Assembly: GCF_003918875.1 (NCBI RefSeq)
Contig: NW_025767346.1
Span: 2,728,001-2,792,000, forward strand
Length of the DNA stretch: 64,000 nucleotides
Origin: Haliotis rubra
Taxonomy: Eukaryota
Direction of reading: 5' to 3'
In this document: positions 1,506-47,635 of the stretch, in pieces
Numbering within the stretch: position 1 is the first letter of the stretch
Layout of the letters: each line of letters opens with the position of its first letter
The notes under the pieces: model-generated
What the model saw: only the letters and a program-made list of their open reading frames with translations
What the model was told of the DNA's origin: nothing
Database searches by the model: none
Translations under genes and position numbers: made by a program

Positions 1506-2338
1506 TTATGCGTAGTAGTAAATGGGGTTGAGTGATGTACCAGGAACATAGCCAAAGAAATCAAGATCCCCAGGACAGTATTTTTACAGTCGTGAGCCAC
1601 GTGACCTCCGACAGCACGTGAAAGGCTTTGTATGTCAGAGTTACTACTCTCTTTCAGTTTGGTTTGTGAGCAAGCATATATAAGATAATATAAGAGTGAG
1701 TGAGTTAAAACTTAAAGTCACATCGGCAGTATTTCAGCCATATCGTGTTTAAGAAAGTTGTAAATTTATAAATGAATAAAAGCAAAGTTAGATATTATAC
1801 TTACCTGTCTGACAATAAAACAACTACGTTATTAGAGAAATGAATTTAAAACTAGTAATTAAATCTAAATTGTTTAACTATAAATGACAACACAATGAGA
1901 GCTTATATTATTAAAGAGATACTTCATAGTTCATGATTTGAAATAGTTATCCCTTGTGATGGAATATCAGATGATATATGAAGAATTACGCTGCACGTGC
2001 GTTACCGGTATGGACATCTTGAAACATAATTTCATTAAGCGTGCCAATAATGCAGGATCTCTCTTATAGTTTGTCTATGAAAACTGGTCTAATGAATATG
2101 CCGCCCTGTAGCCACCCTGTAGCCACCCTGTAGCCACCCTTGTTTTTGACATTTCTCTTGATCATAGTATTATTCAAATGCGTCATTTGCGTCATCGTTC
2201 CAGGAGCCAAGAAATTCAGACGTGCCAGTAATGTCTAAATAGGTGCATCTTCCATCAATTAATGTTTTGAAGCATCCATACGTAACTAATATGTGAATTA
2301 TTTATGATATTTTACTGTAACCAGCGATTAAAAACAGA

Positions 2339-3129: not shown

Positions 3130-4342
3130 TTCTTACACACCATTAAATCGCACCATTTTATGGTCGAATAGATTCATGTTCCATATTTTTCTCATCGTAG
3201 CTGCGCAATAATACACGACACAGCGTTTATGAATGAGTGACGTCATTTGGCTTCCTAATCACTACTCATCCTCAAGGTGACCTCCACAAAAACGTTCCTG
3301 CCACATCTTTGCGTCATCAAGGCAATAGTGGTGATGCAAACTAGGTAAGATCACAGAAAATTAATTAAACACTCTAAAACAATGATGTTACCATGTAAAT
3401 GTGGATGATTTTAAGTCTTGCAAGCATAAAATATTTGAGCGTGTGACGTCATCTTTATCGTTTGGTGGTTGTCGTCATCGGAAGATTGTTTTGGAGATCT
3501 CTGCACATTGGGGATCTGTACTTGTGTACCAGTCTACGTTCAGTGTTCTCCCATCGACCGGAGCTATACCTATTGAGTGCGTGTAATTAGGTGTACGCAG
3601 TGTGCTTGAATGCGACATTGCTGAGGTTACGTTCACTATCAAAGGGGGAGTACTCTTATTCGCCACAGCCTTCTCGTTTTTATACTTTTATTTGCATACT
3701 TGTATAACTACATAAAACACTTTCACCTGATAACAATAAAAATCTGATATGTCTCAATTAACATCACAACTAAAAATAGTTAGTTTGTTGGAGGAGAATT
3801 TCAACATGTACTTACGTGTAGGCATAACACAGATTCTGTCTCAACCATTACAGCATGCAGACACCTGCTATAGTGATAACACCTGTTGAAATCAACACAC
3901 AAGAACAGAGTTTGTCAAAGTAAATCATTGTTATACACTTTTCCTACTGAGGAAGGTTAAACTACTGACTGTGATTTAAGAGAGGAAAAGCTTGAGGCTC
4001 CCTATGACCCATGCTGGGTGTAAGCTATGACTTAAGAGGATTGAGTGGTTAGATGTGTCTCAGTGACAGGATCTGTTTTCTGTTTTAAGGCACGGATTAG
4101 TCTTTAGGTTAGATGTTTTACAGGCCGTTGTTGAAAGCTGAAAAAAATGCTGCTAACTTTGACGGTTCCCGAGCTAACACACACAGTTATCTCAACGTTG
4201 TCGGATTGTTGTTCATTGGTAACGTCATGATACAACGGCGATACGTCTCAACATGACATACATACGTTGTCAAAACGTCGCACATAGACTATTACACAAC
4301 GTTAAGTCACTAAACGTTTGTGAAACGGTAATGCGACTTAAA

Positions 4343-6090
4343 CTGTGAAGATTCAAGTAGGTCTCACTAAACCTGGGGACATTACAGTGAATACCTGTGA
4401 AGACATTCAAGTTGGTCTCACTAAACCTGGGGATATTACAGTGAATACCTGTGAAAACATTCAAGTTGGTCTCACTAAACCTGGGAATATTACAGTGAAT
4501 ACACGTGAAAACATTCAAGTAGGTCTCACTAAACCTTGAGATATTACAGTGAATACCTGTGAAGACATGCAAGTTGGTCTCACTAAACCTGGAGATATTA
4601 CAGTGAATACCTGTGAAGACATTGAAATTGGTCTCACTAAACCTGGGGATATTACAGTGAATACCTGTGAAGACATTTAAGTTGGTCTCACTAAACCTGG
4701 GGATATTGCAGTGAATACCTGTGAAGACATTTAAGTTGGTCTCACCTAACCTGGGGATATGACAGTGAATACCTGTGAAGACATTCAAGTTGGTCTCCCT
4801 AAACCCGGTGATATGACAGTGAATACCTGTGAAGACATTCAAATTGGTCTCACTAAAACGGGGGGTAAGAAAGTGAATACCTGTGAAGACATTCAAGTTG
4901 GTCTCACTTAACCTGGGCATATTACAGTGAATACCTGTGAAGACATTCAAGTTGGTCTCACTAAACCTGGGGATATTACAGTGAATACCTGTGAGGACAT
5001 TTAAGTTGGTCTCATTAAACCTGGGGATATTACAGTGAATACCTGTGAAGACATTCAAGATGGGCTCACTAAACTTGGGGATATTACAGTGAATACCTGT
5101 GAAGACATTGAAATTGGTCTCACTAAACCTGGGGATATTACAGTGAATACCTGTGAAGACATTTAAGTTGGTCTCACTAAACCTGGGGATATTGCAGTGA
5201 ATACCTGTGAAGACATTTATGTTGGTCTCACTTAACCTGGGGATATGACAGTGAATACCTGTGAAGACATTCAAGTTGGTCTCCCTAAACCCGGTGATAT
5301 GATAGTGAATACCTGTGAAGACATTGAAGTTGGTCTCACTAAACCTGGGGATATTACAGTGAATACCTGTGAAGACATTGAAATTGGTCTCACTAAACCT
5401 GGGGATATTACAGTGAATACCTGTGAGGACATTTAAGTTGGTCTCTTTAAACCTGGGGATATTACAGTGAATACCTTTGAAGACATTCAAGGTGGGCTCA
5501 CTAAACCTTGAGATATTACAGTGAATGCCTGTGAAGACATTGAAATTGGTCTCACTAAACCTGGGCATATTACAGTGAATACATATAATACTTGGTCTCA
5601 CTTAACCTGAGGATATGACAGTGAATACCTGTGAAGACATTCAAGTTGGTCTCACTAAACATGGGGATAATACAGTGAATACCTGTGAAGACATTCAAGT
5701 TGGTCTCCCTAAACCTGGGGGTATGACAGTGAATACCTGTGAAGACATTCAAGTTGGTCTCACTCAACCTAGGGATAATACAGTGAAGACATTGAAATTG
5801 GTCTCACTAAACCTGAGGATATTGCAGTGAATACCTGTGAAGACATTGAAGTTGGTCTCACTTAACCTGGGGATATTGCAGTGAATACCTGTGAAGACAT
5901 TCAAGTTGGTCTGACTAAAACGGGGGGTAAGACAGTGAATACCTGTGAAGACGTTCAAGTTGGTCTCACTAAACCTGGGGATATTACAGTGAATACCTGT
6001 GAAGACATTCAAGTTGGTCTCCCTAAACCCGGTGATATTACAGTGAATACCTGTGAAGAGATTCAAATTGGTCTCACCAAACCTTGGAGT
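4343..6090. repeat. 54-bp minisatellite, ~32 copies
   Basis: Unit gtgaatacctgtgaagacattcaagttggtctcactaaacctggggatattaca. Confidence 0.95.
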
Positions 6091-13519: not shown

Positions 13520-15335
13520 ACTGTTTCATCAAGGTCAACATGACATAGAGCTATCACGATAGTGCTACGTGATCAGGATCACGGTCATATTGACACGCGT
13601 GGCACAATAGTGTCACGTGTGGCCGGGAAGTTAACTGGGGATTCAAAAGTAGTATATAAGATGGGGGCGAGATCTAAGCGCCTGACAAAAGCTTTATTTG
13701 TGAAATAAAGCTTTACAGCGACCTTTCTTGAAAAGTGATCTCGTACCCCCAGTATATCTACTACTACAGGTATGTGTGTACATTTTCAAGAGCCATGGTT
13801 TTGATAGCTGTAAAGACAATGTGGGAATACTTCGTATTGGTGTCTATGTTATCATTAACATGAACAGTACACACACCCTTACCATCGCTCTACAGTTAGG
13901 CGATAGGCTTATTGCCTCCAGTAAACCTTCCCCTTCCGACTCTGTGTACATGTATGACCGTAGGTATCTTTTACTCAGACATTGCATCTGGTGTAACATG
14001 TAGATGTTATAGGTAATAAAATCTTCTTCGAGTGACATTTTAGAAGTAGGGACATGCACTATAGAACAAACATTATGGATACCAGCTTCATATATTTCGT
14101 AGGTGCAACGTGTCTATAGAGATTCTTGTACCGTTGTCAAGCGGAAATGTCACCTGTTGAGTAAGGTAATGTAATCATCAAGGAAGTAAATTGATCAGGG
14201 CAGGATTCTGAATGGTGGGTAAGACGACACATACAAGTGTGAATATTATACTTCCGAGCACAGTTGTGGCATGTTAGTCTACTGTTTTAAAAGAAAGATG
14301 GTTACCTTTGTATCTATATGTAATGGTAGATGAATCAATATGACAACATGAAATCTGTACAAATATGGACATCAGGAACATAAAAAGTAGTATGCATCAA
14401 CCGATGTTGTCTACACTTGTGATGATCAGTGACTGGAAACTGTGTGATGAACTCTCCCTTTGTTTTGTGTTGTCTTACACACCTGTAATCAGCACAGCGT
14501 GGTACCTGTACGCCAGTAGCTGATGTGTAAACTTAACTGACCATGTCCACTGACACTAACTACAGTTTTCCAAAATATTATTTGCTTAGTTTGTAAATTT
14601 AGTTTCATTAAAGTCAGTTTCATTCCGATTATTGTAACGGCCGTAGCATGTTCTTTTACACCATCGCGTGCACATGCAGTTTAGTTTGTTCATGGATGCT
14701 AAGAGTAATTCTCCAGATAAATATGTTGCTAAGCTTTGCAAATACTGTAAATCTTAGTGCAGATGGATTCCATCTAAAGCAATTGCTTTCATTGATAAAG
14801 GAACATGTTACACTTCTAGTTTTACCGTACGTTTATTGTTTGTGTCAGTTCATACACCGTACCAATGTTCAGACATGCAACATTTAAATCATTAATTTCA
14901 TTTAGGATTTGTTAGTCATATGTTATGTACTGAATTCAGTTATCTCCAGATCGATCATATCTTTAGTAAATTCACATAAATATGTTATAGGTAATGGAAA
15001 AAGTATTTTTGTTCTATATGCTATGTCTAACGTCACTGGGGTGAAACGAGATGGACATGTGTTTCATATTTCGTAAGTTATTGATCATGCAAGTAAGTTA
15101 TATACGAAACCAAAGATGTGTATATGAATGTATAAGAAATGGTACACATTTTCGTACTATGTAATGGCTTGATAATAGACAAGTTGTTTCAATGTGGCAA
15201 ATCTTTACTGCAACTAAACCACAGGAATTGTTTGATCTCAACTTAAAATATAACCATTACCAAGAGGGTTTCCATAACTAACGCCATACATATACATGTT
15301 TCAGGATCAGAAAGTCGCACCTGCTAGAAAGAAGA

Positions 15336-18300
15336 ATGAACCCGTGTGATCTTCTTTGTCTTCTGATCTTCATTACCCTCCTCTCTGGAAGTAAGAACAG
15401 ACACCATGCTGCCAGAGAAACCTAGTTTTCAAACAAACACTCTTTTCATTGTAAAGCTGCCATTGTATTGGTGTAAATTATCTTCGCAAATGAAGATACA
15501 CATCTATTTGTGAGATATGTATCATGTAACAAACATAAATTCGCAATCGGCATCAAGTCGTACAGTGTTTTAACGGGGGCCCAGTATCCAAACTGGTTCA
15601 TGAATAAGCAGAAAGGCAATAATGTACTGTAAAATAATTTGCTTGTGTGGGTATATTCATTCTTGCAGATCCTCAATTGAGTCTGCTTTTCAAATATCAG
15701 ATGTTCCACTTGTGTGTGCAGGCCAGTGGTACTATTTTGTTGCATTGATCAATTCTCTATTGTCAGTGTGCTGTACAGAAGAATGCATATGTGTACATCA
15801 TGCATGTTGTCGGTACACCAATTAAAACGAAGGACCTTGTTTCCAGGTCAAACATCGCCAGCACCGCCCGATACGTCCGCAGGTGGTGAGTGTTACAAAA
15901 ATGTAAAATAAAGCAACGGAGTGAGTTAGTATAGTTTTACAACGCACTCAGCAATATTCCAGTTATATGGCGGCGGTCTTTAAATAATCGATTCTGGACC
16001 AGACAATCCATGAATCAACAGCCCGAGCATCGATCTGCGCAATTGGGGACCGATGACATGTGTCAACCAAGTCAGCAAGTCTGACCACCCGATCCCGTTA
16101 GTCGCCTCTTACGACAAGCATGGGTTACTGAAGATCAGTTCTAACCAGGACCTTCACGAGTCGAAAGCAGCGGAATTTACTTAAAGGTCACATGCAACCA
16201 AAAACACAAACATAATTAAAACACAATTATCACTTTTTCACGACATTTAATATACATTGCTGATTATGAAGAAACAAATAAACAAATTTAAAAGCGTACA
16301 ATCGCAAATCAAAAGTGCAATATTTTGTACTCGGGTTTTCTTCCCTCGAAACGAAGCACCCGGGAGGCAGAACCTAGTCAGAGCGGGTGGGTGTGCACTC
16401 AAGTGTAACGAAGTCTTTCATTGGGTGGTTCATTTGCCGATACGCTAAGGGCTCATTGTGTGTGTATATAGAGATGTTGGGTTTTGTAAATACATGCTCA
16501 TTTTTTCTGCATTTGCGTTCGATCCAATCAACAAATACTGGGATGGTGAACTACTGCGTGCGTCCAAGTACAAAGCAGGACTTGAATTTTGATAATTTGT
16601 TACTGTAAGGCCATACCGAAAGGTATCAGAATCTGCAAAGTTGTGTTTTGCGTTGCAAGTGACCTTTAATTATCCTGATTGCATAGATAACGCTGGTATG
16701 ACTGCTTACACATGTACCCCACATGTGATGCTGAAGCAGTTGCCCTGGAACATATTTCAGCCAACGGTGGCCATATACATTCGGACTGAATTTTTTCCTC
16801 TTTAACGTCATTCTTCTGTCGTGTCCTTCGCTCTGTTCTTGATTGTTGTTTCGGGTAAAATACAGTGTCATGGTTTGAGCATTAATATCATGGGTAGCTA
16901 TTCTCGGAACGTTCGTAGCCTTACAAACCTCTTAAGCCCATTCCTAACACATTGGCTACGATCAAAGTTAAGAATTCTTAGGGCTTCGAACGTTTCGGGA
17001 ATAAGGGCCCTGATCTCAACTCTACTTATATATATAGTATGACCAGAAATTATTGAGAATTAAGGAATAGGTTTAATTGGATTTCTAGTATAAACAACCT
17101 TGACCAGCTATCAAGTGCTTGGTTTCATTCAAGAGAGACAACTCCGTTAATCCTTTTTCATAAGTTTGTGAAGAGCTATCCCCCTTTTTTTACTTGCTAG
17201 CAGACGACACTTCCTCAGTATGGATGATTTAGAGAAGAGGAAGCTGATTTTAGAGTATTATAACAAGGACGTCAGATCAGCTAAAGTGATTTCAAGTAGA
17301 ACAGGCATCCCTTTGTCCACTGTTTATCGTTTGTTGAAACATATTGCAAATGGATATGGCATTGAGCACCAGGGAGGCGCAGGTAGGCCCAGAAAATTGA
17401 CTGTCGGTGACAGGAGGCGGCTTGGTATTCTTGTTTCTAAAAACAAACGAAGGACTTTAGAAAACTTAAGGCTGGATATGATTAATACAGAACCTGTGGC
17501 TGTATGTCAGGAGACAATTAGAACTGAGCTGCATGCAATGGGTTGGCAGAAAAGTCGAGGAATTCCATCACCGATCATGAAACCTGAACAAAAGGAGTGA
17601 AGGTTGAACTGGTGCTTACAGCATAGAAATTTTAACTGGGATAATGTGATTTTCTCAGATGAAAGTTCTGTGTGGCTGTTTCCTAATACACTGAAAGTCT
17701 GGACCAAACAAACTGAAAAACCTTTGTATCAGCGCCCAAAGTACAGTCCGAAATTTAACGTTTGGGGTGGCATATCTGTGTTAGGGACAACGCTCCTCTG
17801 TGTATTTGAAGGGAATATGAACAGTGAACGGTACACAGATATTCTCGAGGGACATTTACTTCCATCTGCTCACGTGTTCTAAGGAAAGTTTTGGATTTTC
17901 TAACAGGACAACGATCCAAAACATCGTTCAAAGCATTCACAGGCCTTGTTTCGGACCCAAAATATGACATTTTTAGATTGGCCAAGCTATAATCCTGACC
18001 TACATCCAGAAAATGTTTGGGGACTTATGAAGGAAAGTGTCAATACGAAAAATCTGACAAATATTGCTGAAATGAAAGAAGAGGTGGTCCGATATTGGGA
18101 CAGCATGGACCACGACTTTCTATCTTTTTTTTTGATCAGTAGTATGCCCCGCCGCATTGAAGCCTGCATTGCTGCCCATGGTGACTTGACAAAATACTAA
18201 CTGTTCACCTGTCTTTGAATCTGGAGTTATGTTCTGCTAATATTCACATTTACAATCTTTAAATTCTCAATAATTTCTGGTTGTACTGTATTATCTCCGT

Positions 18301-21150
18301 CAGTTGTTAGTGCATTCAGAAAACGTCTGTTTATTCCAGTACAATGTGTGATGCCCATTTCTGGTGTCCCCCCGCCGTGATATTGCTGGAATATTGCTAG
18401 AAGTGGCGTAAAATTAAACTCACTCACCCCGTTATCCCATGTAATGTTCATCAGACCTATGTGTGAAGTATCATCCGGCTGTACCCCTATCACACAGATA
18501 TATAAGGACGGTAAATGTCACAGAACTTGGGTATGTAAAGTAAAGTAATTAAGACTGGGTCTCGGCAGTGACAGAACGAATTAAGAAAGATCAGTGTAAA
18601 CAGTGCACAGTTACATGTAACTCCCAGTCTCCCATCCCTCGATCACTTTTAGTTTTAGTGATTTCTATAATGACGTCACTCTTGTAAGGCGTTACTACCA
18701 ACTAGGTCACGTTGAGGGGCAAGGGTATATGCGACCAGAACATTTCCAAATGTTCTATAAAGAGGGTGAGATGCTTATCCTTTAGTTCTTACACAAGAGT
18801 GTTTATGGACCGATATATTGACTATTTGTAGCTTACCTAAAACTCATAAATGAAGTCAGTTAGACATGACAGGATCCGCAGTTGTGGGTTCAAATCTTTT
18901 TAACATTCTTCCCACAGAAAGATAATATTATTTTACGCCGCATTGAAACAAACTCGGTTGTTCCTCCTATACAGAATAGCCTCAGCTCTTTGTCGTATTT
19001 TAACAGGGTTAATAGCATTATACTGATAATATATTTCTCCTCATTTTGCGATATTGTACAAACGTCATATATTTGTCCTTATATATGACATTTGTGATGT
19101 AGTCATCATTGTTAGGGTGTACTCAACGATTGGTACTTAAAGAGTTAAAAAATATAGCACATTCCTGAATTGTTAACGTTTCTTAATAAATTTAACGTGA
19201 TAAAAAGACAAGTTTGTAATGCAATTGAGCTACTGTGTACACAGACGAGGTAAATTTCATATTCAAGAAACATAAGTAGGTTTGTTAGTAATTGTTACAC
19301 ATTTTAAGGAATGCACAATATTTCAAATCACAGCACCACAGAAGCAGGAGTGGTTATAGGTGTGTGTATAATGCTGGTTGTGGATGGCGTCTTGCTGTAT
19401 GTGGCGTACCTCTTCAGGGACGAAATAGCAGACTGCATAGGTAAGTATGAAACAAATGGTTTTTTTTATTTAAACTTTTATTTCAAAGTAAATACAAACA
19501 AATATAGTTTATTGCAAGTTCCAGTGCGTCAAGAAATGAAAAATGACGAAATCTGTAGGAAATGGACCATTCTTTCAGGTTCTGAGAATTACAATGGATC
19601 TCATTTTGACATATACATAAAAAAATAGTATGTAAGTTGACACTTGATGCAATGACTTCCACAGTTGATAACATGTTGAGACAGCAGAATACGATGATGT
19701 TTAAGTCCTCCACAGATCATTAGCGGTCATTAGTTTCTCAATACATGGCAGCATGATACAGTACACGGGGGTGTCTCGGGATTTTATACTCCAGGCAGAA
19801 GCTGCACTCATCAGGGAAGACAACTTGGTGGCAGTTGTAGCCTCAGTTCACTCACTGACAGATGAAAAACTGGTGTTATACATAACGATCATCTCCTGAG
19901 TGTGGTCTACTCGTAGTTTGTGTATGACAGCGACGTTTGTAAACGCCTGGCGACAGTCTACATCAGCCATCCTTCTTCGTACTTTTGATAATTTCTTGCT
20001 CATAGTATTAATGAAACATTTCAATTTTTTCAGGAGTCAAGAAAGCCAGAAATACAAATGTGCCAGTAATGTCCAAGTAGGTGTACCTTTTACAATTAAT
20101 GCTTTGAGCCATTTATAACTACGAAACTAAAATATGAATGATTTATGAAATTTCGGTAATTAAAACTAGTTTGTTAGTAAAATACCTTTAATATATATGC
20201 AGCTGATTTTAAATGTCAGCAATATATGAACATCAGTTGGATACAATAATACAAATGATCAGGTTTAAATAATGAACAGATGCGTCAGTAATGTCCAAGT
20301 AGGTGCATTTTTCTACAATGAATGTTTTGAAGCCTTCATAAATATTTCATTAAAATGTGAATCATTTATGCTATTTCACAAATTGAAACTAGTTTCTTGA
20401 AGAGTTTGAACGCGTCCTAATTTTGTCGCCATTACACATATTCCCTCTCAACCATTACAGCATACAGTCTCCTCAGTCCACAGTGATCGCACCTGCCGAA
20501 ATCCAAAGACAAGGTGAGCGTTGGTCAACGTAAAAGATTACTATAGACGTTTCCGACTGAGGAAAGCTAAATGGTGAAATAAGAGAGTAAAACGGCTCCC
20601 TATATAAGACATGACTGCAGAGGATTGAGTGGTTAGACGCTGATGTGTCCAATTGTGCAGTGCTTAGCTTTCAGTCTCTGCTTAGTCCTTGTTTAGGATA
20701 GATGTTTTAGATGCCGTTGTGACAAGCGGAATGTTCCTAACAGTGGCATCGCTCACTCACTCACTCACTCACTCACTCACTCACTCATTCACCTACACAT
20801 CCACACACTCACTCACTCAACCAACCCACACACTCACTCACTCACCCAACCTACTCTCTCACTCACTCACTCAACCACACACTCACTCACTCACTCACTC
20901 ACTCACCCAACCCACTCACTCACTCACTCATTCACTTATAAATGTGTCTTCATATGTTCCGTAATACCTCGCTGTCCTTTCAAAGATAAATGTGTCGGAG
21001 TGGCAATGAAAACTGACTATATGTGTCTATGTAGGTGGAGGCGACGAGTACGAAGTACCAGTGGACAGAAATGATTACGAATCCCTACAGAGAGCAGCTG
21101 CTGACGTCCCCAACACTTATGAGAAGATACGGACATACCAGAATGTGTGA
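15336..21150 (+). CDS. Gene 1: Ig-less single-pass membrane protein (signal peptide, ~15-aa ectodomain, Asp-containing TM, four-tyrosine ITAM-like tail), ~134 aa
   Basis: Hand-spliced GT-AG exons: 15336-15390 (MNPCDLLCLLIFITLLSG), 15847-15885 (SQTSPAPPDTSAG), 19342-19440 (EAGVVIGVCIMLVVDGVLLYVAYLFRDEIADCI; an alternative in-frame acceptor lies at 19309), 20034-20076, 20461-20513, 21035-21150 (GGDEYEVPVDRNDYESLQRAAADVPNTYEKIRTYQNV*). Phases are compatible, total 405 nt, and each exon is homologous to an exon of genes A-C. Confidence 0.72.
15919..16162 (-). mobile_element. SINE-like retroposon with (TCAC)n tail (family 1)
   Basis: TSD aaagca(a/g)cgga; near-identical copies at 21181 and 27283. 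Confidence 0.85.
16185..16665. mobile_element. Non-autonomous DNA transposon with TTAA TSD (Kolobok-like)
   Basis: TTAA|AGGTCACATGCAAC ... GTTGCAAGTGACCT|TTAA. Confidence 0.8.
16892..17010. mobile_element. Small MITE
   Basis: Terminal inverted arms tattctcggaacgttcgtagcc / ggcttcgaacgtttcgggaata. Confidence 0.55.
17035..18288 (+). mobile_element. Tc1 (DD34E) transposon, full length, transposase inactivated
   Basis: TA TSD and ~27-bp TIRs (accagaaattattgagaatt). Transposase 17220-18200 has HTH, GRPRK, FSDES, VWGGIS, QDNDPKH and WPSYNPDLHPENVW motifs with internal stops. Confidence 0.93.
20752..20935. repeat. (TCAC)n microsatellite
   Basis: Direct inspection. Confidence 0.9.
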
Positions 21151-21180
21151 AACAAGGAGACACTGACTATCAACTACCAA

Positions 21181-21454
21181 GAGTGAGTGAGTGAGTTTAA
21201 TTTTTACGCCGCACTCAGCAATGTTCCAGCTATATGGCGGCGGTCTGTAAATAATCGAGTCTGGACCAGACAATCCAGTGATCAACAGCATGAGCATCGA
21301 TCTGCGCAATTGGGAACCGATGACATGTGTCAACCAAGTCAGCGAAACTGACCACCCGATCCCGTTAGTCGCCTCTTACGACAAGATAGTCGCCTTTTTT
21401 ATGGCAAGCACATGGGTTGCTGAAGACCTATTCTACCCCGGATCTTCACGGGTC
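21181..21454 (-). mobile_element. SINE family 1 in the 3' UTR of gene 1
   Basis: TSD tcaactaccaagagtga on both sides. Confidence 0.88.
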
Positions 21455-21666
21455 TCAACTACCAAGAGTGACTTTTACAATCAATGTCCAGTGGACATTT
21501 GCTCAGAAGTCAATGGAAACTCTAACGTTTGATCATAAAAATAGAAATTCAGTTGTATCTACTGAACATTAATTACTGCAATATTTTATGTTTCTTGTGA
21601 CAAGCAGTTGCCCTTAATACATAATGATATCACATGCAAGGATTTCATAAAGCTTGTAGATATAAA

Positions 21667-21826
21667 TGAGTGAATTTAATTTTACGCCGCTTTCAGCAAT
21701 ATTCCAGCAATATCACTACGGGGGACACCAGCAATGGGCTTCACATATTGTGCACAAGTGGGGAATCGGATTCAGGTCTTCGGCGTAACGAGCAAACGCC
21801 TTAACCACTAGGCTACACCACCGCCC
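21667..21826 (-). mobile_element. tRNA-derived SINE (family 2)
   Basis: Reverse complement has A-box ggtgtagcctagtggttaa and the shared 3' tail gatattgctggaatattgct...gcggcgtaaa. Confidence 0.82.
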
Positions 21827-22640
21827 TGGTAGATATTATTTAACCCTCATATGTTTAAGGTCAAAACGTCCGAACATCACCATCATGTTCAATCTTATTC
21901 TTTGGTTTGTTGTTGTTTACTCAGCAACACTGAATCTATATCAGCGCGGTCTGTCAATAATTGATTGTTGACCAGACAATACAGTGATAGACATCGCGAG
22001 CATGAATCTACGTAGCAGGAAGGATATGGGGAAAAAAGAAAATATGATCTATATCTCAATATAAAACGTACATATGTGTAATCTACACGTTGAGTCTTGC
22101 TTTAGCAAAATGTGTTCAAATAAATATTTATATTCAAATATAAATATAGTGTGTATTTATGAACCAGTGAGCGCTCAAGTTTACATGAACCATTCCGAGT
22201 GCTTACAATCGGAAAACTATACTCGGTACTATCAGGTATACCGATGTTTCACAAGGCAAGTTGTGAATCTTTGCCATAGCAACTGCCAATGTCATTTCAC
22301 TTGACTTTTCGTTATTTCGTTTGTTTCGACATTTACCATAAAACATAAGGTAAGCACCTGCTTGTAGTGGCACGTCTTGATTCAACGCCTGGACAAACAT
22401 CAGATTCATTTACCTCATTAACCATAACTCATAAATTAAGCAAATGCTTTCATGTCTTGATGAAATTCAAGGTCAAACGAGAGATGATACAAAGCATATA
22501 CATAGTACTGTGCTGCACTTTTTTATTCAGATCAAGAATTCATTTCTCAAACTCATTCTTACGTGCTTTATGAATAGCAACAATATTTTACAACAAACTA
22601 CACTTTGATCACTTCCATTAAGATTTCTACATTAACAGTA

Positions 22641-22995: not shown

Positions 22996-23439
22996 TATTT
23001 TGTACTTTAAGCTTCTGCCAATCATGTATGCGGTGCCCTATCCTTTATTGTATTGTACGTTAATTGTTTTATTCTTACCTTGAACGCCAACCTACTACCA
23101 TTATATGCATTGTTTTATTCTTGTTTTTCTGTTAAGAAAATAACCTGTATATCGTTTTGATCTTATCCTGAACTTGAAGCTACTAAGTTGTCTATGAATT
23201 GTTTTGTTCTCATCCTGTACCTGAAACTACTAGCCTGTGTGCTCTGTTTACTATTCTGTACAACAACAGTAACGCGTTGCATGTACTTATTTGTACGTTA
23301 TGTCAAGCTACTATCCAGTGTAAGTACAGTATGCTCTGATCTTTATGTCAAGCTACAACTTCCACAATATTTTCTTCTTCATCTAAATGTCAAACTACGC
23401 TAAGCAATATGTCTATTTTTAGCTAATTTGTGTCTTTCT

Positions 23440-24050
23440 CGCGTGTGTATTACTTGTCCTGTATGACAAGCTACAACCTTGCGGCTGCTTTGTTTCTTTA
23501 ATGTATATGAAGGCACAATCCTGTGTATGCTTTGTTTCACCCTCATCCTGTATGTCAAGCTACAACCTTGCGCCTGCTTTTTTTTGTTTCTATAATGTAT
23601 ATGAAGCCATAATCCTGTGTATGCTTTGTTTCACTCTTGTCCTGTATGACAAGCTACAACCTTGCGGCTGCTTTCTTTTGTTTCTATAATGTATATGAAG
23701 GCACAATCCTGTGTATGCTTTGTTTCACTCTTGTCCTGTATGACAAGCTACAACCTTGCGGCTGCTTTCTTTTGTTTCTATAATGTATATGAAGGCACAA
23801 TCCTGTGTATGCTTTGTTTCACTCTTGTCCTGTATGACAAGCTACAACCTTGCGGCTGCTTTCTTTTGTTTCTATAATGTATATGAAGGCACAATCCTGT
23901 GTATGCTTTGTTTCACTCTTGTCCTGTATGACAAGCTACAACCTTGCGGCTGCTTTCTTTTGTTTCTATAATGTATATGAAGGCACAATCCTGTGTACGC
24001 TTTGTTTCACTCTTATCCTGTTTGTCAAGCTACAACCTTGCGGCTGCTTT
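23440..24050. repeat. 94-bp tandem repeat (dimer of a ~47-bp monomer); degenerate monomers extend ~23100-24300
   Basis: Identical ORF starts at 23662, 23756, 23850 and 23944. Confidence 0.92.
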
Positions 24051-24689
24051 GTTTTGTTCCTATCTTGTATGTCAAGCTACAATCTCGTGTATGCTTTGTT
24101 TCGTTCCTATCCCGTATGTCAAGCTACGGTCCTATGTATGCTTTGTCAAGCTACAATCCGGTGCATGCTTTGTTTTATTTCGTATCCTGTAGCAAGCTAC
24201 AATCCTGTACATGCTTTCCTTTGCCATAAACCTTATATTATGCAACAAATCTGTAATTCAAATATTTATACCTTTATCCTTGTTTCAACGTACTCACTTG
24301 GATATGCATTGTTTTGTTTTACGCCACGTTGTTAGTTTCCTGCGTCTATGGTCTCAGTGCCTCCAGAAATTCTGGACTTAATGGCACCCTAAACACAAAG
24401 GTCAGACTTGTTAACAACTCCCTGTGTTTACTGCAGGACCTGTTTTGCATCAAACCATATGAAATCGTCTCAACGTTCATCTGTTACATGACTGCATAAT
24501 TTTACCCCAACATACAATATTTAAAGTAAATAGGAGCTCCTTAGCCCATACTGGATAATTGTAAAACTTTCACGTGGTAACTGGAGTGACCTGAAAAAAA
24601 CATGTGTAACTGCATGTCGAACAGATTGTACGATTTCCGACTCCTCTTGTGCCGGCGACCGCAGGTGTATGTGCCACTTGAAAGGAATG

Positions 24690-25320
24690 CTCAGCTCTGC
24701 TGGTGTATCTCTGAGATGTATCCCCTGAGCACATGCTCATGTATCTCTGAGCTGCAATTTCGTCCAGTTCATGAATTGTTTAGATGGAACCACGCTAACC
24801 CCACGTAGGTCTGAGCTGCACATTTGTTCATTTATCTCTGAGTGGAACATCGATAAGCTCCCGTTTGTCAACTTGAAAAACGGGAGTCAGCTCATGTATG
24901 TCTCAGCTGTGGGTCCGCTCAGTTCAGGTGCGTCTGAGCTGAAACTCCGACCAGCTCATGCATCTCCCCACAGCTCATAAGTGTGAATTTGAACCCCGCT
25001 GAGCACACGCATGTGAACTGCAGTGCTGCTCAGTTCATGTATGTCTGAGCTGTAACTCCGCGCAGCTCCTGTCTACCTGAACTTGACCTCCGCTCAGTTC
25101 CTATATCTCAGGGCTGCTACTCCCACCAGCTCATGTATCTCTAGGATAAAGCTTCCCAAAGCTCATGTATGGGACTTGAACTCCCACACAGCTCAGCTCA
25201 TATCATGTTTGACTGTGCTTGAACTCCGCATACCTGAGGTAAACCTAAGTTAGACCGCCACTCAGATCTATGTCTGAGCTGGAACTCATCTCCATTCCTG
25301 CATGCCTGAGCTCCCAGATT
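24690..25320. repeat. Degenerate tandem repeat (gctcatgtatctctgagctg core)
   Basis: Motif recurs roughly every 30-35 bp. Confidence 0.65.
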
Positions 25321-29483: not shown

Positions 29484-29631
29484 NNNNNNNNNNNNNNNNN
29501 NNNNNNNNNNNNNNNNNNNNNNNNNNNNNNNNNNNNNNNNNNNNNNNNNNNNNNNNNNNNNNNNNNNNNNNNNNNNNNNNNNNNNNNNNNNNNNNNNNNN
29601 NNNNNNNNNNNNNNNNNNNNNNNNNNNNNNN
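29484..29631. other. Assembly gap (148 N)
   Basis: N run; the paralogous site (~614-680) is a (ttcat)n-like tract. Confidence 0.99.
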
Positions 29632-31602: not shown

Positions 31603-33503
31603 GGAGCCAAGAAATTCAGACGTGCCAGTAATGTCTAAATAGTTGCATCTTCCATCAATTAATGTTTTGAAGCATCCATACGTACGTAACTAATATGTGA
31701 ATGATTTGTGATATTTTACTGTAACCAGCGCTTAAAAACAGACACGCTGCTTGTAAGGGTGAGGGCACACTGCTGGTAGGGGTGAGGACACGCTGCTGGT
31801 GGGGGTGAGGGCACGCTACTTGTAGGGGTGAGGGCACGCTGCTGGTATGGGTGAGGACACGCTGCTTGTAGGGGTGAGGCCACGCTGCTTGTAAGGGTGA
31901 GGACACGCTGCTTGTAGGGGTGAGGGCACGCTGCTGGTAGGGGTGAGTGCATGCTGCTTGTAGGGGTGAGGGCACGCTGCTGGTGGAGGTGAGGGCACGC
32001 TGCTGGTAGGGGTGAGGGCACGCTGCTTGTAGGGGTGAGGGCACGCTGCTTGTAGGGGTGAGGGCACGCTGCTGGTAGGGGTGAGTGCATGCTGCTTGTA
32101 GGGGTGAGGGCACGCTGCTGGTAGGGGTGAGTGCATGCTGCTTGTAGGGGTGAGGACACGCTGCTTGTAGGGGTGAGGACACGCTGCTTGTAGGGGTGAG
32201 GGCACGCTGCTTGTAGGGTAGAGGGCACGCTGCTTGTAGGGGTGAGGGCACGCTGCTTGTAGGGGTGAGGGCACGCTGCTTGTAGGGGTGAGGGCACGCC
32301 GCTTGTAGGGGTGAGGGGAAGCTGCTTGTAGGGGTGAGGACATGCTGCTGGTATGGGTGAGGGCACGCTGCTTGTAGGGGTGAGGGCACGCTACTGGTGG
32401 GGGTGAGGGCACGCTGCTTGTAGGGGTGAAGGCACGCTGCTGGTAGGGGTGAGGGCACGCTGCTTGTAGGGGTGAGGGCACTTCATTATAAGAATGGGCG
32501 GATGAATACAGGAACCATAAATCCACAAGAATATCACCATGCAACATTTGAAATGTCATAAATGAACAAGAACAATTCGTCCATCCTAGTAAATTGGTTA
32601 TGTACAATAACAAATAGGTCATAACCATATTTAACTGGTTGCATTCAATAAAATATATTGAATATCACAAATACACAAATATAGATTACTTAACGAGTGT
32701 CTGTCAGATACCATTTATCTTAAAACGAGTTGGTTCAAAACGTATTTTACGAGCGAAAGCGATTTAAAGACGTTTTGAAACAATTCAAGTTGTAAGATAA
32801 ATGGTATCTGACAGACTCTCGTTAAGTAATCTGTTTCTTAAACACCCTTAAATCGCACCATTTTATGGTCGAATACATTCATGTTTCATATTTTCTCATC
32901 GTAGCTGCGCAATAATACACAACACAGCGTTTATGAATGAGTGACGTCATTTGGCTTCCTAATCACTACTCATCCTCAAGGTGACCCTCCACGCCTTCGC
33001 GTCATCAAGGCAATAGTGGTGATGCAAACTAGATAAGATCACAGAAAATTAATTAAACACTCTCAAACAATGATGTTACAATGTAAATGTGGATGATTTT
33101 AATTCTTGCAAGCATAATTTTTTTGAGCGTGTGACGTCATCGTTATCGTTTGGTGGTTGTCGTCATCGGAAGATTGTTTTGGAGATCTCTGCACATTGGG
33201 GATCTGTACTTGTGTACCAGCTTACGTTCAATGTTCTCCCATCGGCCGGAGCTATATCTATTGAGTGTGTGTAATTAGGTGCACCCAGTGTGCTTGAATG
33301 CGACATTGCTGATGTATACGTTCACTATCAAAGTGGGAGTACTTGATATGTCTCAATTGACATCACAACCCCAAAATAGTTAGTTTGTTGGAGGAGAATT
33401 TCAACATGTACTTACGTGTAGCCATAACACAAATTCTCTCTCAACCATTACAGCATGGAGACACTTGCTAAAGTGATAGCACCTGTTGAAATCAACACAC
33501 AAG
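31603..33503 (+). pseudogene. Second decayed remnant of the receptor family (duplicate of 2204-3903)
   Basis: The same two exon homologues occur at ~31603-31638 and ~33454-33503 with dead splice donors. Confidence 0.55.
31743..32481. repeat. 23-bp G-rich minisatellite, ~32 copies
   Basis: Same unit as 2339-2777. Confidence 0.95.
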
Positions 33504-34728
33504 AACAGAGCTTGTCAAAGTAAATCATTGTAATACACTCTTCCGACTGATGAAGGTTAAATGGTGATTTAAGAGAGGAAAAGCTTGATGCTCTCTATGA
33601 CCCATGCTGGGTGTAAGCTATGACTTAAGAGGACTGAGTGGTTAGATGTGTCCCAGTGACAGGATCTGTTTTCTGTTTTTAAGTACGGATTAGTCCTCAG
33701 GTTAGATGTTTTACAGGCCGTTGTTGAAAGCTGAAAAAATGTCGCTGACTTTGACGGTTCCCGACCTAATACACACAGTTTTCTCAACGTTCTCGGAAGG
33801 TTGTTCATCGGATACAGCAGTGTCCCGTTTGTATGACGTTATTTTATAAAGTTACTTCCCAACATTACATACATACGTTGTTAGAACTTCGCGTATCGAC
33901 TGTGAAGACATTCAAGTTGGTCTCACCAAACCTGGGGGTATTACAGTGAATACCTGTGGAAACCTGTACAGACATTCATGCTGGTCTCACTAAAGCTGGG
34001 GGTATTACACTGAATACCTGTGAAGACATTCATGCTGGTCATCAACAATGTTGTCACGACTTCTCCGTTTCAGTGGGCAGTTTCCGCCATATGCAATCAT
34101 GACCTACTTCTCCTTTATGCTCTTGATCCAGTTTCATGTTGGTGTATCTGTTCAATCGGACTCTAACAATGAACTGTAATCGTATGTAGAATACGCCTCA
34201 CACATTTGCAGAGCGTGTGCATTCAACAAGGAAGTATAATGTGCAGGTGGGATTTCTAATGGCGGTTGAGTTCATCTGTACAGGTATGTGTGTGTATTTT
34301 CAACAATCCTTGAAATGATAGTTGTATCGACAATTTGGGAACGCTTCGTATTGGTGTCTATATTATCATTGGCATGAACACTGCACACATCTTTACCATC
34401 GCTCCACAGTTAGGCGATATACTTCTTGACACACTCAGACGTTCACCCTACTGACTGTGTTACCATGGCCGTTGGTATGTTTTACACAGACATTGTATTT
34501 GGTGTAACATGTAGATGTTATAGGTAATACAATCTTCTTTGAGTGGCATTCTAGCAGTTGAGACAACAAACATTACGGATAACACATTCTTTTATTTCGT
34601 GAGTGCGACGTTTCGATACAGATTCTTGTACTGTTGTCAAGCAGGAATGTGGGGTGTGACGTACGGTAATGCAGTCATCAAGGGTGTAAATTGAGCAGGT
34701 TACGATTCTAAATGGTGGGTAAGGTGAC

Positions 34729-34775: not shown

Positions 34776-35868
34776 AGTGTGTGTATATATATATATATAG
34801 TGTGTGAGTAATATATGCTTCCCAACACAGTTGTGACGAATGCATCTACAGTTCTAAACGACAGATGGTTACCTTTGTACATATATGTAATGGTAGATGA
34901 AATAACATGACAAGGTATCTGTACTCATATGAACAGTCAGGAACATACTAAGTAGTATGCATCCACCGATGCTGTCTACACTTGTGATGATCAGTGACTG
35001 GAAACTGTGTGATGAACTCTACCTTTGTTTTGTGTTGTCTTACACACCTGTAATCAATGCTGCCTGTTACCTGTACGCCAGTAGCTAATGTATACAGTTA
35101 TACAGTGTGTATCTATGTATAGACGTAACTGGCCTTGTCCACTGCTGGTTAATGCAGTTCTCCAATAGAATATTTGCTTAGTTTGTAAATGTCAGTTTAA
35201 TTTGGGATATCGTAACGGACGTAGCATGTACCTTTACACCATCAAGTGTACATGCAATTTCGTTTGTTCATGGTCACTAAGAATAATTCTCCAGATAAAT
35301 ATTTTGCTAAGCCTTGCAAATACTGTAAATTTAAGTGCAGATGGAATCCATCTGAATCAACTGCTTTTATTGAAAAGAGAATATGTTACAGTTATTCTTT
35401 TACCATACCTTCATTGTTTGTTTGTGTCAGTTCATACACCGTACCAACCTTCATACATGAACTTCAATTTCGATTTGTTAGTCATATGCTATATACTGTT
35501 ATCTCCAGTTCAATAAAATCACATAAAATATTTTATAAGTAATGAAAATGTTCTTTGTTTCGATATTGTTTGTCTGACGCCACTAGGGCGAAACTTGATG
35601 GACGCGTGTTTTATATTTCGTAAGCTAATGATCATGCAAGTAAATTATATACGAAACCAAAGATGTGTACATCAATGTATAACAACTGCTACACATTCTC
35701 CTATAATGCAACGTTTTGATAGTCAAGTTGTTTAAATATGTGGCAAATGTAAAGGTTAAGTTTGATCTCATCTGAAAATATAACCTTATAGTACCAGAGG
35801 GATTCCATAACTAACGACAAACACGAACATGTTTCAGGAACAGAAAGTCGCACCTGACAGAAAAAAGC

Positions 35869-36979
35869 ATGAACCCGTGGGATCCTTATTGTCTTCTGAC
35901 CTTTATGACCTTTTTGACTGGAAGTAAGTACATTTAACATGCTGCCAGACAAATAAGGTTTTCGGGGGGAGGAGGGGGAGGAGGTAGGAGAAATAAATTT
36001 AATTTTAAAGCTGTAATGCTATTGCTGTAAATGATGTTCACTTTGCAAACAAACACGCGTATGCGTGCAGTTCTTGTGATATATCTCATATATCACACAT
36101 AAATTCGCAACCAGTATTAAGCAGTACAGTGGATTAACTGACGGGGTAGGGATCAACTCAATGGTGTCTAAGAGGCAGTAGTAATACGTGTACCAAAGAA
36201 TTATTTTGCCTGTGTGAATATTTTTACTCCTGTTCATCTTCAAAGAAATTCGAATCTGCTTCTCGAATGCCACATGTTCCACTTAGGTGTTTCGAAACTG
36301 AAATACAGTACTTAGACGTCACTGACTTAGACGTTATGTGAAATCAGTCACTATATCCGTACATCTTCACAAAGTGTCACCTGTGAAGCACAGAATACAG
36401 AAACCATGAATATGTTGTACCTGTGACGGCGCAGTGATATGTTTCTATGATATATAGTATTGGGTGCAAATATTTATATGAATCAGTCAATCCTCATTTA
36501 TATTGAATTAATATGAATTCAAGTACATGTTTTTCAGCCACTGGGGCAAGCCTGACCGCATCCCCAAGCCAAATAACTATCGGGGGCAGTAACCCAACAT
36601 CTAAGTTGACGGTAAGTTGCAGTCCAAATGCACCTGGAATCACTACATTGTATAACATAGAGATTGGCAAGAAGTCTTCTACTGGCTCTGATCAGCCTAT
36701 AATACGAATCGGAAACACAGAAACGTTAGTACAAGTGGTGGACTCAAGTCTACAACAGAGGATGACAGCCTCGGGTTCTATCAGTGGAGCAACAGGCAGT
36801 ATACAGTTCATCCTGACAGAACTGAGATGCGCTGATGCTGCCTCTACATACTACTGCAGCACGTTATACTTGACAGGAGAAGCTGGAAATGACGGGGCAT
36901 CTACTAACATCACGGCAAGAAGTGTGTCAAGTTAATATTTACTCACACTGAATCCGAAACGTTTGGTTTCCTTGAGGGA

Positions 36980-37056
<77 letters not shown>

Positions 37057-40000: not shown

Positions 40001-40863
40001 CCCTGCATGTCATTATAATTTGTCCATTCATTAATCTGATATTCGGTTGTTACAGGACCAAAGGACACCAGTAACGCAGAGAAGGCAGTATTCTCTAAGT
40101 AGGTTCACCTTTTCCAGAATTAATACTTCCAAACATTCATCACAATGTAATAAATATCCTACTTGTAGATCGAAAATTGTTTCTAGACAAAGAGTTCTTC
40201 AATTTCTTAGGTTTGTAGGCATATCTATTCTGTAAAAATAAAAATAAAACAGTTTTGCAGCATAATAAGCATGGCCATAAAATATATCCTTTCTCAACCA
40301 CTACAGCATGCAGGCTCCTGCCACAGTGGTCGCACCTGTTGGAATCCAAACACAAGGTCAGATTTTGTCAATGTACATTATCACAATACAAGTGTCCAAC
40401 AGAAGAGAACCTAAATAGTGACACAAGAACAGAAATGCTTCTCGTTCTCCATGCTTGGTGTTCAAGCTAACAAATACTAACTGGTCAGTGTCCATGGATC
40501 AGCAGACATCTTGTCAATATTTCCTGAAGGCATGAATCCATGCATCCTCTTTCAGTCATTGGTTTGTCAGATTTTAAGCCAGATTCGCGTAAAGAAATGA
40601 ACCATCGCCGACGGGGAGTGTTAAAATACCGCTCACACCATTGAGATAGACGAGCATGACTACAAATTACCATAGTAATTGAACTGTTAAAGGAGTGGAT
40701 GTCTGAAGGACATTGTTAACGTACCTACTACACACGTTTCTTGTAGGGGTAGGCGACGAGTACGAAGTACCAATTGACAGGAAATACCTACTGTGGCCTA
40801 CAGAGAGGAGCTGCTGACGTCCCAAACACTTATGAGAAGATACGAACGTACCAGCATGTGTGA
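35869..40863 (+). CDS. Gene A: two-Ig-domain type I membrane receptor; last exon has a +1 frameshift that truncates the tail
   Basis: Exons: 35869-35923 (signal), 36538-36921 (V-like, LTVSC...LRCADAASTYYC), 37260-37610 (Ig2, SMRC...WTW...DNGRQFRC), 38002-38049 (stalk), 38804-38941 (TM GVGVAIGVCVMLVVDAVCLGLAFVL), 40056-40098, 40307-40356 and 40747 onward. An extra A at ~40782 gives DEYEVPIDRKYLLWPTERSC* (stop 40815-40817); the ancestral stop is at 40861-40863. Confidence 0.8.
36982..37067. repeat. (CT)n/(CA)n/(GT)n compound microsatellite in gene A intron
   Basis: Direct inspection. Confidence 0.95.
39551..39712 (+). mobile_element. tRNA-derived SINE (family 2), specific to gene A intron
   Basis: A-box, B-box (gttcgattccc) and family tail; absent from the gene B intron. 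Confidence 0.82.
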
Positions 40864-47264: not shown

Positions 47265-47635
47265 CAAGGCGCTGCTAGTTTTTCCCTCGATCGTTGGATG
47301 TCAATCTCAACGGCACATTGTATTATCATTCTCCACTCCCTGGGGAGTATACAACTCTTGCAGCCACTAGGCGCACCGAGTTATTGTGGCATTCTCATCC
47401 TATCGAGGTACCCATTCACAGCTGGGTGGACTGGGACACATAGTCACAGTGCTTTGTTCAAGTTCAATGTACGTTGCTGTACCTGCAACTAGGTGTTTGC
47501 ACGTATTCATGTGGCCACCATCTGGCACTATACCAATAATTATGTACTACAGAACTAGGAAGCATAGACAATGCTGGCATAAATGTCTTGACACTTACAT
47601 CGACACTCCGTTGCACGTAATTCTGCCAACGATGG
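47265..47635 (-). mobile_element. SINE-like insertion specific to gene B
   Basis: Absent from the gene C intron (~59660); contains the SINE core-like ggtacccattcacagctgggtgga. Confidence 0.55.

What the first reader, a model, noticed from the sequence alone, without database searches (positions are those of the whole stretch)
15336..21150. Ig-less paralogue with a DAP12/FcR-gamma-like adaptor architecture
Seen: intron 1 matches the paralogues' intron 1 up to ~15720 and then reaches the stalk exon with no Ig exon. The six exons still join into an open 134-aa ORF: signal peptide, ~15-aa ectodomain, TM with central Asp, and tail DEYEVP..DYESL-x10-YEKI..YQNV. Known: DAP12, FcR-gamma and CD3-zeta combine a tiny ectodomain, an acidic TM residue and an ITAM, and pair with receptors carrying a basic TM residue. 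Inference: a signalling adaptor derived convergently from a receptor by exon loss. Caveats: no basic-TM partner is encoded in this window, the spacer (10) is longer than the canonical 6-8, and the paralogue-equivalent TM acceptor (19334) would be out of frame, so the model needs the acceptor at 19342 or 19309.
Basis: partly seen in the sequence, partly recalled or inferred. Interest (0 to 1): 0.85.

Follow-up and report, generated by a model that had tools for sequence, protein, structure and literature searches.

The report
Headless chimeric abalone receptor paralogue
This abalone gene is a recent patchwork copy of a neighbouring two-Ig-domain receptor gene that lacks both Ig exons, so it only looks like a small signalling adaptor, and the copy in this window carries a frame-breaking 19-base deletion.

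Summary
The observed anatomy is real. Six GT-AG exons (15336-21150) encode a signal peptide, a short stalk, a membrane helix with Asp and a tail with YxxL-x10-YxxI-YxN. There are no Ig exons.

The adaptor reading is not supported, for five reasons.
1. The gene is a chimera. An A/B/C-type 5' end is fused at 15718-15725 to a recent copy of Haliotis rubra LOC124256786. That copy starts 32 nt past the donor's second Ig exon.
2. The membrane Asp and the tail come unchanged from that Ig-bearing donor. The ectodomain introns are all phase 1, so the open frame needs no selection to explain it.
3. This allele has a 19-nt deletion in the membrane exon. With the acceptor used by its relatives, translation stops after 39 residues. 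It also has a SINE in the 3'UTR.
4. The H. rubra reference allele is intact and already annotated as XP_046546702.1 (143 aa, "uncharacterized").
5. RNA contigs show only the 3' end of this gene. The one spliced contig fits the Ig-bearing donor.

No partner with a basic membrane residue was found.

The scan has noted ectodomain-less receptor paralogues elsewhere in this genome. A second Ig-less gene exists in this family.

The parts
14523..15335 (+). 5' flank (putative promoter region), homologous to the 5' flanks of paralogues A, B and C
   Evidence: 14523-15717 matches 35115-36290 at 71%. It also matches C and B at 73-74%.
15336..15390 (+). Exon 1: signal peptide, 55 nt, leaves phase 1
   Evidence: It is 95% identical to the H. 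rubra allele but only about 78% identical to exon 1 of the donor gene X.
15718..15725 (.). Chimeric junction. A/B/C-type intron 1 ends at about 15717 and the X-derived sequence starts at 15726.
15726..22637 (+). Copy of the 3' part of LOC124256786 (X). It runs from 32 nt past X's Ig2 exon through the stop codon and into the 3' flank. Homology resumes at 23204-24916.
   Evidence: 88-94% identity to L005 19485-29425 and 36810-38270
15847..15885 (+). Exon 2: Ser/Thr/Pro-rich stalk, 39 nt, phase 1-1
   Evidence: Identical in the H. rubra allele of this gene and in X.
15919..16160 (.). SINE copy in intron 2, shared with X
16890..18260 (+). Decayed Tc1/mariner-like element in intron 2, broken into three ORF pieces and shared with X
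   Evidence: HTH_Tnp_Tc3_2 and DDE_3 match below the Pfam cut-offs.
19334..19440 (+). Exon 3: membrane exon with Asp. With the family's acceptor (19334) it is 107 nt and out of frame, with a stop at 19357-19359. In-frame alternative starts are 19309, 19342 and 19348. The 19-nt deletion lies between 19346 and 19347.
20034..20076 (+). Exon 4: juxtamembrane cytoplasmic segment, 43 nt
20276..20398 (+). Partial duplicate of the end of exon 4 and the start of intron 4, lying inside intron 4
   Evidence: 77% identity to 20054-20175
20461..20513 (+). Exon 5, 53 nt
   Evidence: The H. rubra allele has a GC donor here instead of GT.
20744..20943 (.). (CTCA)n-type microsatellite in intron 5
   Evidence: read laying skipped it as a repeat
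21035..21150 (+). Exon 6: tail with YEVP, YESL-x10-YEKI and YQNV, then the stop codon at 21148-21150
   Evidence: RNA contigs X3 record 22 (21051-21125, perfect match) and X1 record 8 lie on it.
21187..21454 (.). SINE inserted in the 3'UTR, 36 nt past the stop, with a 17-nt target-site duplication (21170-21186 and 21455-21471). It is absent from the H. rubra allele and from X.
   Evidence: RNA contigs X2 record 15 and X3 record 23 cross the junction.

Best explanation
The gene is a young chimeric partial duplicate in an abalone-only family of type I membrane proteins. Family members have two Ig-like domains, a stalk, a membrane helix with Asp and an ITAM-like tail.

Its promoter, signal-peptide exon and the first roughly 330 nt of intron 1 come from an A/B/C-type paralogue. 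At 15718-15725 this 5' part is joined, without homology, to a copy of the Ig-bearing neighbour LOC124256786. That copy begins 32 nt downstream of the donor's second Ig exon. It carries the donor's stalk, membrane and tail exons, the transposons in its intron, and its 3' flank.

All ectodomain introns are phase 1, so the join stays in frame without any selection. The membrane Asp and the tyrosine motifs are simply inherited.

The allele in this window then lost 19 nt of the membrane exon between two GGAGT repeats, and it gained a SINE in the 3'UTR. With the acceptor used by all relatives it encodes a 39-residue peptide with an early stop. I infer that it is a null or nearly null allele.

The intact allele in the H. 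rubra reference (143 aa) could make a headless membrane protein with a signalling-type tail. Nothing here shows that it acts as an adaptor. I judge the locus a dispensable, decaying by-product of birth-and-death turnover in this cluster.
For: - Ortholog or allele: XP_046546702.1. Its locus L001 is collinear with the window at 96-97% identity and has the same Ig-less structure.
- Donor gene: P0014, 432 aa. Its last 125 residues differ from this gene at 8 positions. At the nucleotide level 13 of 375 differ, with dS 0.059, dN 0.029 and omega 0.49.
- Extent of the copy: window 15726-22637 and 23204-24916 match L005 from 19485 onward. X's Ig2 exon ends at 19453.
- The 5' part is only 71-78% identical to any relative.
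- Exon lengths 384, 351, 39/48 and 126/138 are all multiples of 3.
- The 19-nt deletion and the resulting stop at 19357-19359.
- The SINE with a target-site duplication is absent from L001 and L005.
- DNA run X5 appears to carry both forms at the deletion site. This is an indirect reading of contig depths.
- Every other paralogue in the window is also damaged: A has a frameshifted tail, B has a stop in Ig2, and C lost Ig2 to a Tc1 element.
- The other allele has a GT-to-GC change at the exon 5 donor.
- A second, very recent Ig-less duplicate (LOC124256823) sits beside its Ig-bearing twin.
Against: - Exons differ less than unique intron sequence between the two alleles: 3/413 against 52/2645, one-sided Fisher p = 0.048. 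This weakly suggests constraint.
- The 3' end of this very allele is present in RNA-like contigs of two runs.
- In-frame acceptors 8 and 14 nt downstream could rescue part of the message.
- NCBI annotates the intact allele as a protein-coding gene.
- Two or more independent headless genes in one genome could reflect selection rather than mutation pressure.
Confidence: 0.6

Rival explanations
1. The intact allele encodes a real DAP12/FcR-gamma-like signalling chain. It would pair through its membrane Asp with receptors that carry a basic membrane residue and short tails. After tyrosine phosphorylation its YxxL-x10-YxxI motif would recruit a Syk-type kinase. The deletion allele would be a segregating null.
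For: - The architecture fits.
- A 10-residue spacer lies inside the 6-12 range used for the oyster receptor CgIgR, which binds Syk (PMC6994640).
- There is weak evidence of exon conservation between alleles.
- Headless genes recur: LOC124256823 and an EGF-less gene noted elsewhere in this genome.
Against: - The Asp and the tail are inherited from an Ig-bearing parent that carries its own ectodomain.
- The mature ectodomain has no Cys for dimer formation.
- No relative with a basic membrane residue was retrieved.
- There is no homology to known adaptors.
- Both alleles carry blemishes.
- Omega of 0.49 is not distinguishable from 1.
Confidence: 0.12
2. The headless protein modulates its own family. 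It would associate through the shared membrane and juxtamembrane segments with Ig-bearing paralogues such as LOC124256786. It would then act either as a ligand-blind decoy or as an added signalling subunit.
For: - The membrane and tail segments are about 94% identical to those of the parent gene 29 kb upstream.
- The oyster receptor CgIgR is reported to dimerise (PMC6994640).
- Both genes appear in the same RNA-like runs.
Against: There is no direct evidence of any interaction. This gene and its parent both lack the membrane-proximal Cys found in A, B and C. This allele is frameshifted.
Confidence: 0.15
3. In this allele the frame is rescued by an alternative acceptor (19342, 19348 or 19309). 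A protein of 134, 132 or 145 aa would then be made.
For: All three starts are in frame and follow an AG. The site at 19348 has the CAG|G context. The 3' end of this allele is found in RNA-like contigs, so the message is not wholly destroyed.
Against: The upstream AG at 19332-33 is the one used by the intact allele and by the paralogues, and it is unchanged here. No RNA contig lies on exons 1-5 of this allele in three runs.
Confidence: 0.1

Closest known systems
Haliotis rubra LOC124256787 (XP_046546702.1, 143 aa, 'uncharacterized protein')
   Same: It is the same gene, either an allele or the ortholog. It has the same six exons, the same missing Ig exons and the same intronic transposons. Exon identity is over 99%.
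   Different: The reference allele keeps the 19 nt in the membrane exon and uses the family's acceptor in frame. It lacks the 3'UTR SINE. It has a GC donor at exon 5 and two amino-acid differences (I13M, S113A).
Haliotis rubra LOC124256786 (P0014, 432 aa), the Ig-bearing sister and donor
   Same: The stalk, the membrane helix with Asp and the tail are nearly identical (8 of 125 residues differ). Introns, transposons and the 3' flank are shared.
   Different: It has two Ig-like domains and a different 5' end. It lies about 29 kb upstream, outside this window.
DAP12 (TYROBP), FcR-gamma and CD3-zeta
   Same: All have a signal peptide, a very short ectodomain, an acidic residue in the membrane helix and paired YxxL/I motifs in the tail.
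   Different: There is no sequence relation and no ectodomain Cys. The spacer is 10 residues rather than 6-8, and there are extra YEVP and YxN motifs. No partner is known. The features were inherited from an Ig-bearing parent. The comparison with vertebrate adaptors rests on textbook knowledge.
CD3 epsilon/gamma/delta and CD79a/b
   Same: The parental architecture matches this type: Ig ectodomain, polar or acidic membrane residue and the chain's own ITAM. That is true of A, B, C and LOC124256786.
   Different: The abalone family has two Ig-like domains and no detectable homology. This is a resemblance recalled from general knowledge and was not tested.
Oyster CgIgR (PMC6994640)
   Same: It is a molluscan Ig-superfamily membrane receptor with its own ITAM ending in YEKL, and it is shown to recruit Syk.
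   Different: It has five Ig domains and a spacer of 7. No headless form is described, and it is not a sequence relative found in my searches.
Haliotis rubra LOC124256823 (P0007/P0011, 157/152 aa)
   Same: It is a second Ig-less gene of the wider family. It sits in tandem with an Ig-bearing twin (LOC124256848) and has the same membrane Asp and a YEAL-x10-YEKM-YQNL tail.
   Different: It belongs to a different subfamily (39% identity), has a longer stalk and arose independently and very recently.

Membership tests
DAP12/FcR-gamma/CD3-zeta-type ITAM adaptors | Very short ectodomain after a signal peptide | tested here: met
DAP12/FcR-gamma/CD3-zeta-type ITAM adaptors | Ectodomain cysteine that forms a disulfide-linked dimer | tested here: not met
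   There is no Cys between the signal peptide and the membrane helix. The Cys of A, B and C (ACVQENQ) is replaced in this gene and in its donor.
DAP12/FcR-gamma/CD3-zeta-type ITAM adaptors | Acidic residue within the membrane helix | tested here: met
   Asp sits in ...IMLVVDGVLL.... Nearly all Ig-bearing relatives share it.
DAP12/FcR-gamma/CD3-zeta-type ITAM adaptors | ITAM: YxxL/I, spacer, YxxL/I | tested here: inconclusive
   The motif is YESL-x10-YEKI. That lies outside the 6-8 range and inside the 6-12 range used in PMC6994640. The Pfam ITAM model gives no hit at E <= 1.
DAP12/FcR-gamma/CD3-zeta-type ITAM adaptors | Assembly with receptors that have a basic membrane residue | not testable with these tools
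   None is encoded in the window. Relatives that share the Ig domains have plain hydrophobic membrane helices, or are FN3/secreted or GPI-like forms.
DAP12/FcR-gamma/CD3-zeta-type ITAM adaptors | Sequence homology to a known adaptor | tested here: not met
   There is no Pfam family above its cut-off and no PDB chain with E below 0.4.
Abalone two-Ig, membrane-Asp, ITAM-like tail family (LOC124256786-like) | Homologous signal-peptide, stalk, membrane and tail exons with phase-1 ectodomain introns | tested here: met
   Only five clusters exist among 1.84 billion representatives, and all are from Haliotis.
Abalone two-Ig, membrane-Asp, ITAM-like tail family (LOC124256786-like) | Two Ig-like ectodomain exons | tested here: not met
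   No Ig exon lies between 15390 and 15847, or anywhere else in the gene.
Expressed protein-coding gene (this allele) | Spliced transcript joining exon 1 to exon 2 with an open frame | tested here: inconclusive
   RNA-like contigs cover only exon 6 and the 3'UTR. The one spliced contig fits the donor gene.

The most novel reading that the evidence does not exclude
The intact allele of this gene, and perhaps the other headless paralogues of abalone, encodes a working ITAM signalling chain. It would assemble through its membrane Asp with other haemocyte receptors. That would be a DAP12-like adaptor caught at birth from a receptor gene, segregating with a null allele.
Probability: 0.12. Interest if true: 0.75.

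Novelty: new member of a known kind. Interest (0 to 1): 0.33.

Why it matters
The origin of ectodomain-less ITAM adaptors is unknown. If the adaptor reading were true, a mollusc would show one being made from a receptor by exon loss, with intact and null alleles available for genetic tests.

As the evidence stands, the value is more modest. The work documents how a birth-and-death Ig receptor cluster throws off in-frame headless copies as a by-product of phase-1 exon structure. It identifies the parent gene. It also warns that adaptor-like architecture in such clusters is not in itself evidence of adaptor function.

Tried and rejected
1. Small annotated proteins from H. rufescens (P0002, 121 aa) and H. 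asinina (P0003, 131 aa) looked like further Ig-less orthologs. Their loci hold signal-peptide and Ig exons just upstream, so they are truncated annotations.
2. I first read the 377-nt spliced contig of run X2 as mRNA of this gene using acceptor 19348. After the donor gene was found, the piece lengths fitted that gene's mRNA exactly (25+39+126+43+53+91 nt, with a mismatch at 20036 and a 1-nt extension at exon 2).
3. Pfam gave no Ig hit for any family member.
4. The AlphaFold model was poor overall (pLDDT 42). I used it only for the first Ig domain.
5. The locus of H. asinina P0004 could not be fetched, so there is no dN/dS against the nearest Ig-bearing relative in another species.
6. The 134-aa spliced model has no single reference, and I did not type it in. 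Instead I searched with the open frame around the membrane exon, using a region limit.
7. Paper searches for the LOC numbers and for molluscan DAP12-like adaptors found nothing relevant.
8. One Pfam call failed on a frame error and was corrected.
The N run at 29484-29631 was left untouched.

Full report
**Observation.** Acceptor 19334 shifts the frame and acceptor 19309 keeps it. A third in-frame AG at 19346-47 gives an exon start at 19348.

The window holds three full-size paralogues on the same strand: A (35869-40860), B (44409-50625) and C (55903-63193). Each has two Ig-like exons, not one. In A these are 36538-36921 and 37260-37610. They are followed by one or two stalk exons, a membrane exon with Asp and three tail exons.

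The gene under study is called T from here on. Its 5' flank, exon 1 and intron 1 match A up to 15717 and stop there. Pfam does not see the Ig domains. A model of the full-length H. asinina relative is poor overall, but reasonable over residues 60-160. It matches IgV domains (CD200R/CD200, nectins, CD8, MPZ, TIGIT) at Z 10-12.7.

**The same gene is already annotated.** I searched with the open frame around the membrane exon. This found XP_046546702.1, "uncharacterized protein LOC124256787 [Haliotis rubra]", 143 aa. Its locus (L001, GCA_003918875.1) is collinear with window 5185-27007 at about 96-97% identity. It has the same Ig-less six-exon gene with the same intronic SINE and Tc1-like element.

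Earlier notes of this scan call this genome blacklip abalone. My own data show only that it is H. rubra or something very close to it.

The reference allele uses the family's acceptor, the equivalent of 19334, in frame. It can do so because it retains 19 nt that the window lacks. The missing piece lies between two GGAGT repeats, after 19346. With that acceptor the window allele encodes 39 residues. Its stop at 19357-19359 lies 177 nt upstream of the last exon junction. That it triggers mRNA decay is my inference.

DNA run X5 shows a contig with 9 unmatched letters that begins to match at 19347. It carries reference-like variants at 19459/60, at 62 of 98 depth units. The depth arithmetic implies that a window-like contig is present as well. 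So the deletion looks real and heterozygous in that sample, but this is an indirect reading.

**Origin.** A search with the H. asinina relative found H. rubra LOC124256786 (P0014, 432 aa), called X from here on. X has two Ig domains, and its stalk, membrane and tail segments differ from T at only 8 of 125 residues. It lies about 29 kb upstream of T on the same strand, outside this window.

Window 15726-22637 and 23204-24916 match X from position 19485 of locus L005 onward at 88-94% identity. The match includes the SINE, the Tc1-like element and the 3' flank. X's second Ig exon ends at 19453. Across that boundary X stays collinear with the standard family layout, whereas T switches to A/B/C-type intron 1. 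The junction is at 15718-25. Upstream of it, T is only 71-78% identical to any relative.

T is therefore a chimera: an older 5' end joined to a recent copy of the Ig-less part of X. It is not an in-place deletion.

The ectodomain exons have lengths 384, 351, 39/48 and 126/138, so all those introns are phase 1. Any such join therefore stays in frame. Between T and X, 13 of 375 coding positions differ (5 synonymous, 8 non-synonymous; dS 0.059, dN 0.029, omega 0.49). This cannot be told apart from neutrality.

In a tree of the membrane and tail region, T groups with an Ig-bearing H. asinina gene at 95/91 support.

**Family context.** A search of 1.84 billion representative proteins found only five clusters with this membrane and tail type, all from Haliotis. 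The membrane Asp is present in nearly all members, with or without Ig domains.

The small proteins P0002 and P0003 are truncated annotations, with Ig exons lying upstream. A genuine second Ig-less gene does exist. LOC124256823 (157/152 aa) sits in tandem with its near-identical Ig-bearing twin LOC124256848.

Every paralogue in this window is damaged:
- A has a 1-nt frameshift in the last exon that removes the distal tyrosines.
- B has a TAA in its second Ig exon.
- C lost its second Ig exon to a Tc1 element.

These are shown. The reference allele of T has a GC donor at exon 5. The window allele has a SINE with a 17-nt target-site duplication 36 nt past the stop, and this SINE is absent from both L001 and L005.

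**RNA.** Runs X1-X3 are labelled only "RNA?". They cover transposons and exons, give zero depth on unique intron bins, and contain a spliced contig, so they behave as RNA.

The spliced 377-nt contig of X2 fits the mRNA of X exactly. It reads as 25 nt of the Ig2 exon end, then 39, 126, 43, 53 and 91 nt. Three details support this:
- The 40-nt piece on exon 4 is explained by X's mismatch at 20036.
- The 40-nt piece on exon 2 is explained by one matching base at the end of X's Ig2 exon.
- The start at 19347 is explained by the 19 nt that T lacks.

Signal specific to T is limited to contigs that cross the junction between the 3'UTR and the SINE (X2 record 15 and X3 record 23, depth about 5) and to exon 6. 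No contig lies on exon 1 in any run. The exon 1 to exon 2 junction, and the choice of acceptor, are therefore untested.

**Function.** The following points are shown:
- The tail and the Asp are inherited from the donor.
- T has no sequence relation to known adaptors.
- The mature ectodomain has no Cys.
- Relatives that share the Ig domains have plain hydrophobic membrane helices, or are FN3/secreted or GPI-like forms. None has a basic membrane residue.

There is weak evidence for constraint. Exons differ less than unique intron sequence between the two alleles: 3/413 against 52/2645, p = 0.048.

The 10-residue spacer lies within the 6-12 range used for the oyster receptor CgIgR, which recruits Syk (PMC6994640). 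The tail is therefore plausibly competent to signal in the parent receptors.

My reading is that T is a dispensable, decaying by-product of cluster turnover, and that the window allele is a null (confidence 0.6). A real adaptor role for the intact allele remains possible at about 0.12, and a role as a modulator of its own family at about 0.15.

**Novelty.** The gene is in RefSeq as uncharacterized, and no paper mentions it. Its chimeric origin, its parent gene and the null allele are new details. Truncated partial duplicates in receptor clusters are a known kind of thing. The scan has already reported an ectodomain-less receptor paralogue elsewhere in this genome.

Noticed in passing
window 40747-40863: The last exon of paralogue A has a 1-nt insertion relative to T, B and C. 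The tail ends early (...DRKYLLWPTERSC*) and loses the YEKI and YQNV motifs.
   Followed up: partly
window 45908-46261 (stop near 45975): The second Ig exon of paralogue B carries an in-frame TAA at the position where A encodes Ser.
   Followed up: partly
window 57202-58990: Paralogue C keeps only the first 23 codons of its second Ig exon.
   Followed up: partly
window 2144-2312, 3817-4142, 31605-31716 and 33417-33735: There are two sets of orphan copies of T-type exons 4 and 5, with a mutated donor after the exon-4 copy. Each set is followed by the same 23-nt tandem array (2339-2778 and 31743-32481). They look like remnants of older family members, duplicated together with the 5' regions of T and A.
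   Followed up: partly
window 4343-6084: A tandem array of 54 nt x 33 copies overlaps a minus-strand gene model of the H. rubra annotation (194 aa, unnamed).
   Followed up: no
L001 15433-15434: The H. rubra reference allele of T has a GC instead of a GT donor after exon 5. X and paralogues A and B have GT there.
   Followed up: partly
L004 10001-18281 and 24843-28281: A second Ig-less gene (LOC124256823) sits in tandem with its Ig-bearing twin (LOC124256848). Both have an inverted fragment of the Ig exon between the stalk and membrane exons.
   Followed up: partly
proteins P0035-P0037 (H. rubra LOC124259319 and a 'DAN4-like' gene): Some annotated isoforms appear to read the family's membrane exon in another frame (...SGYRCVCNAGRWCH...). 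This would give products without a membrane helix.
   Followed up: no
window 21126-21131: RNA contigs of all three runs break between 21125 and 21132, where T and X differ (G/A at 21126 and 21131). One X2 contig leaves the window sequence at 21153 for 109 unlike letters. Both points fit T-type and X-type messages being present together.
   Followed up: partly
window 29484-29631: There is a run of 148 N. I left it untouched.
   Followed up: no
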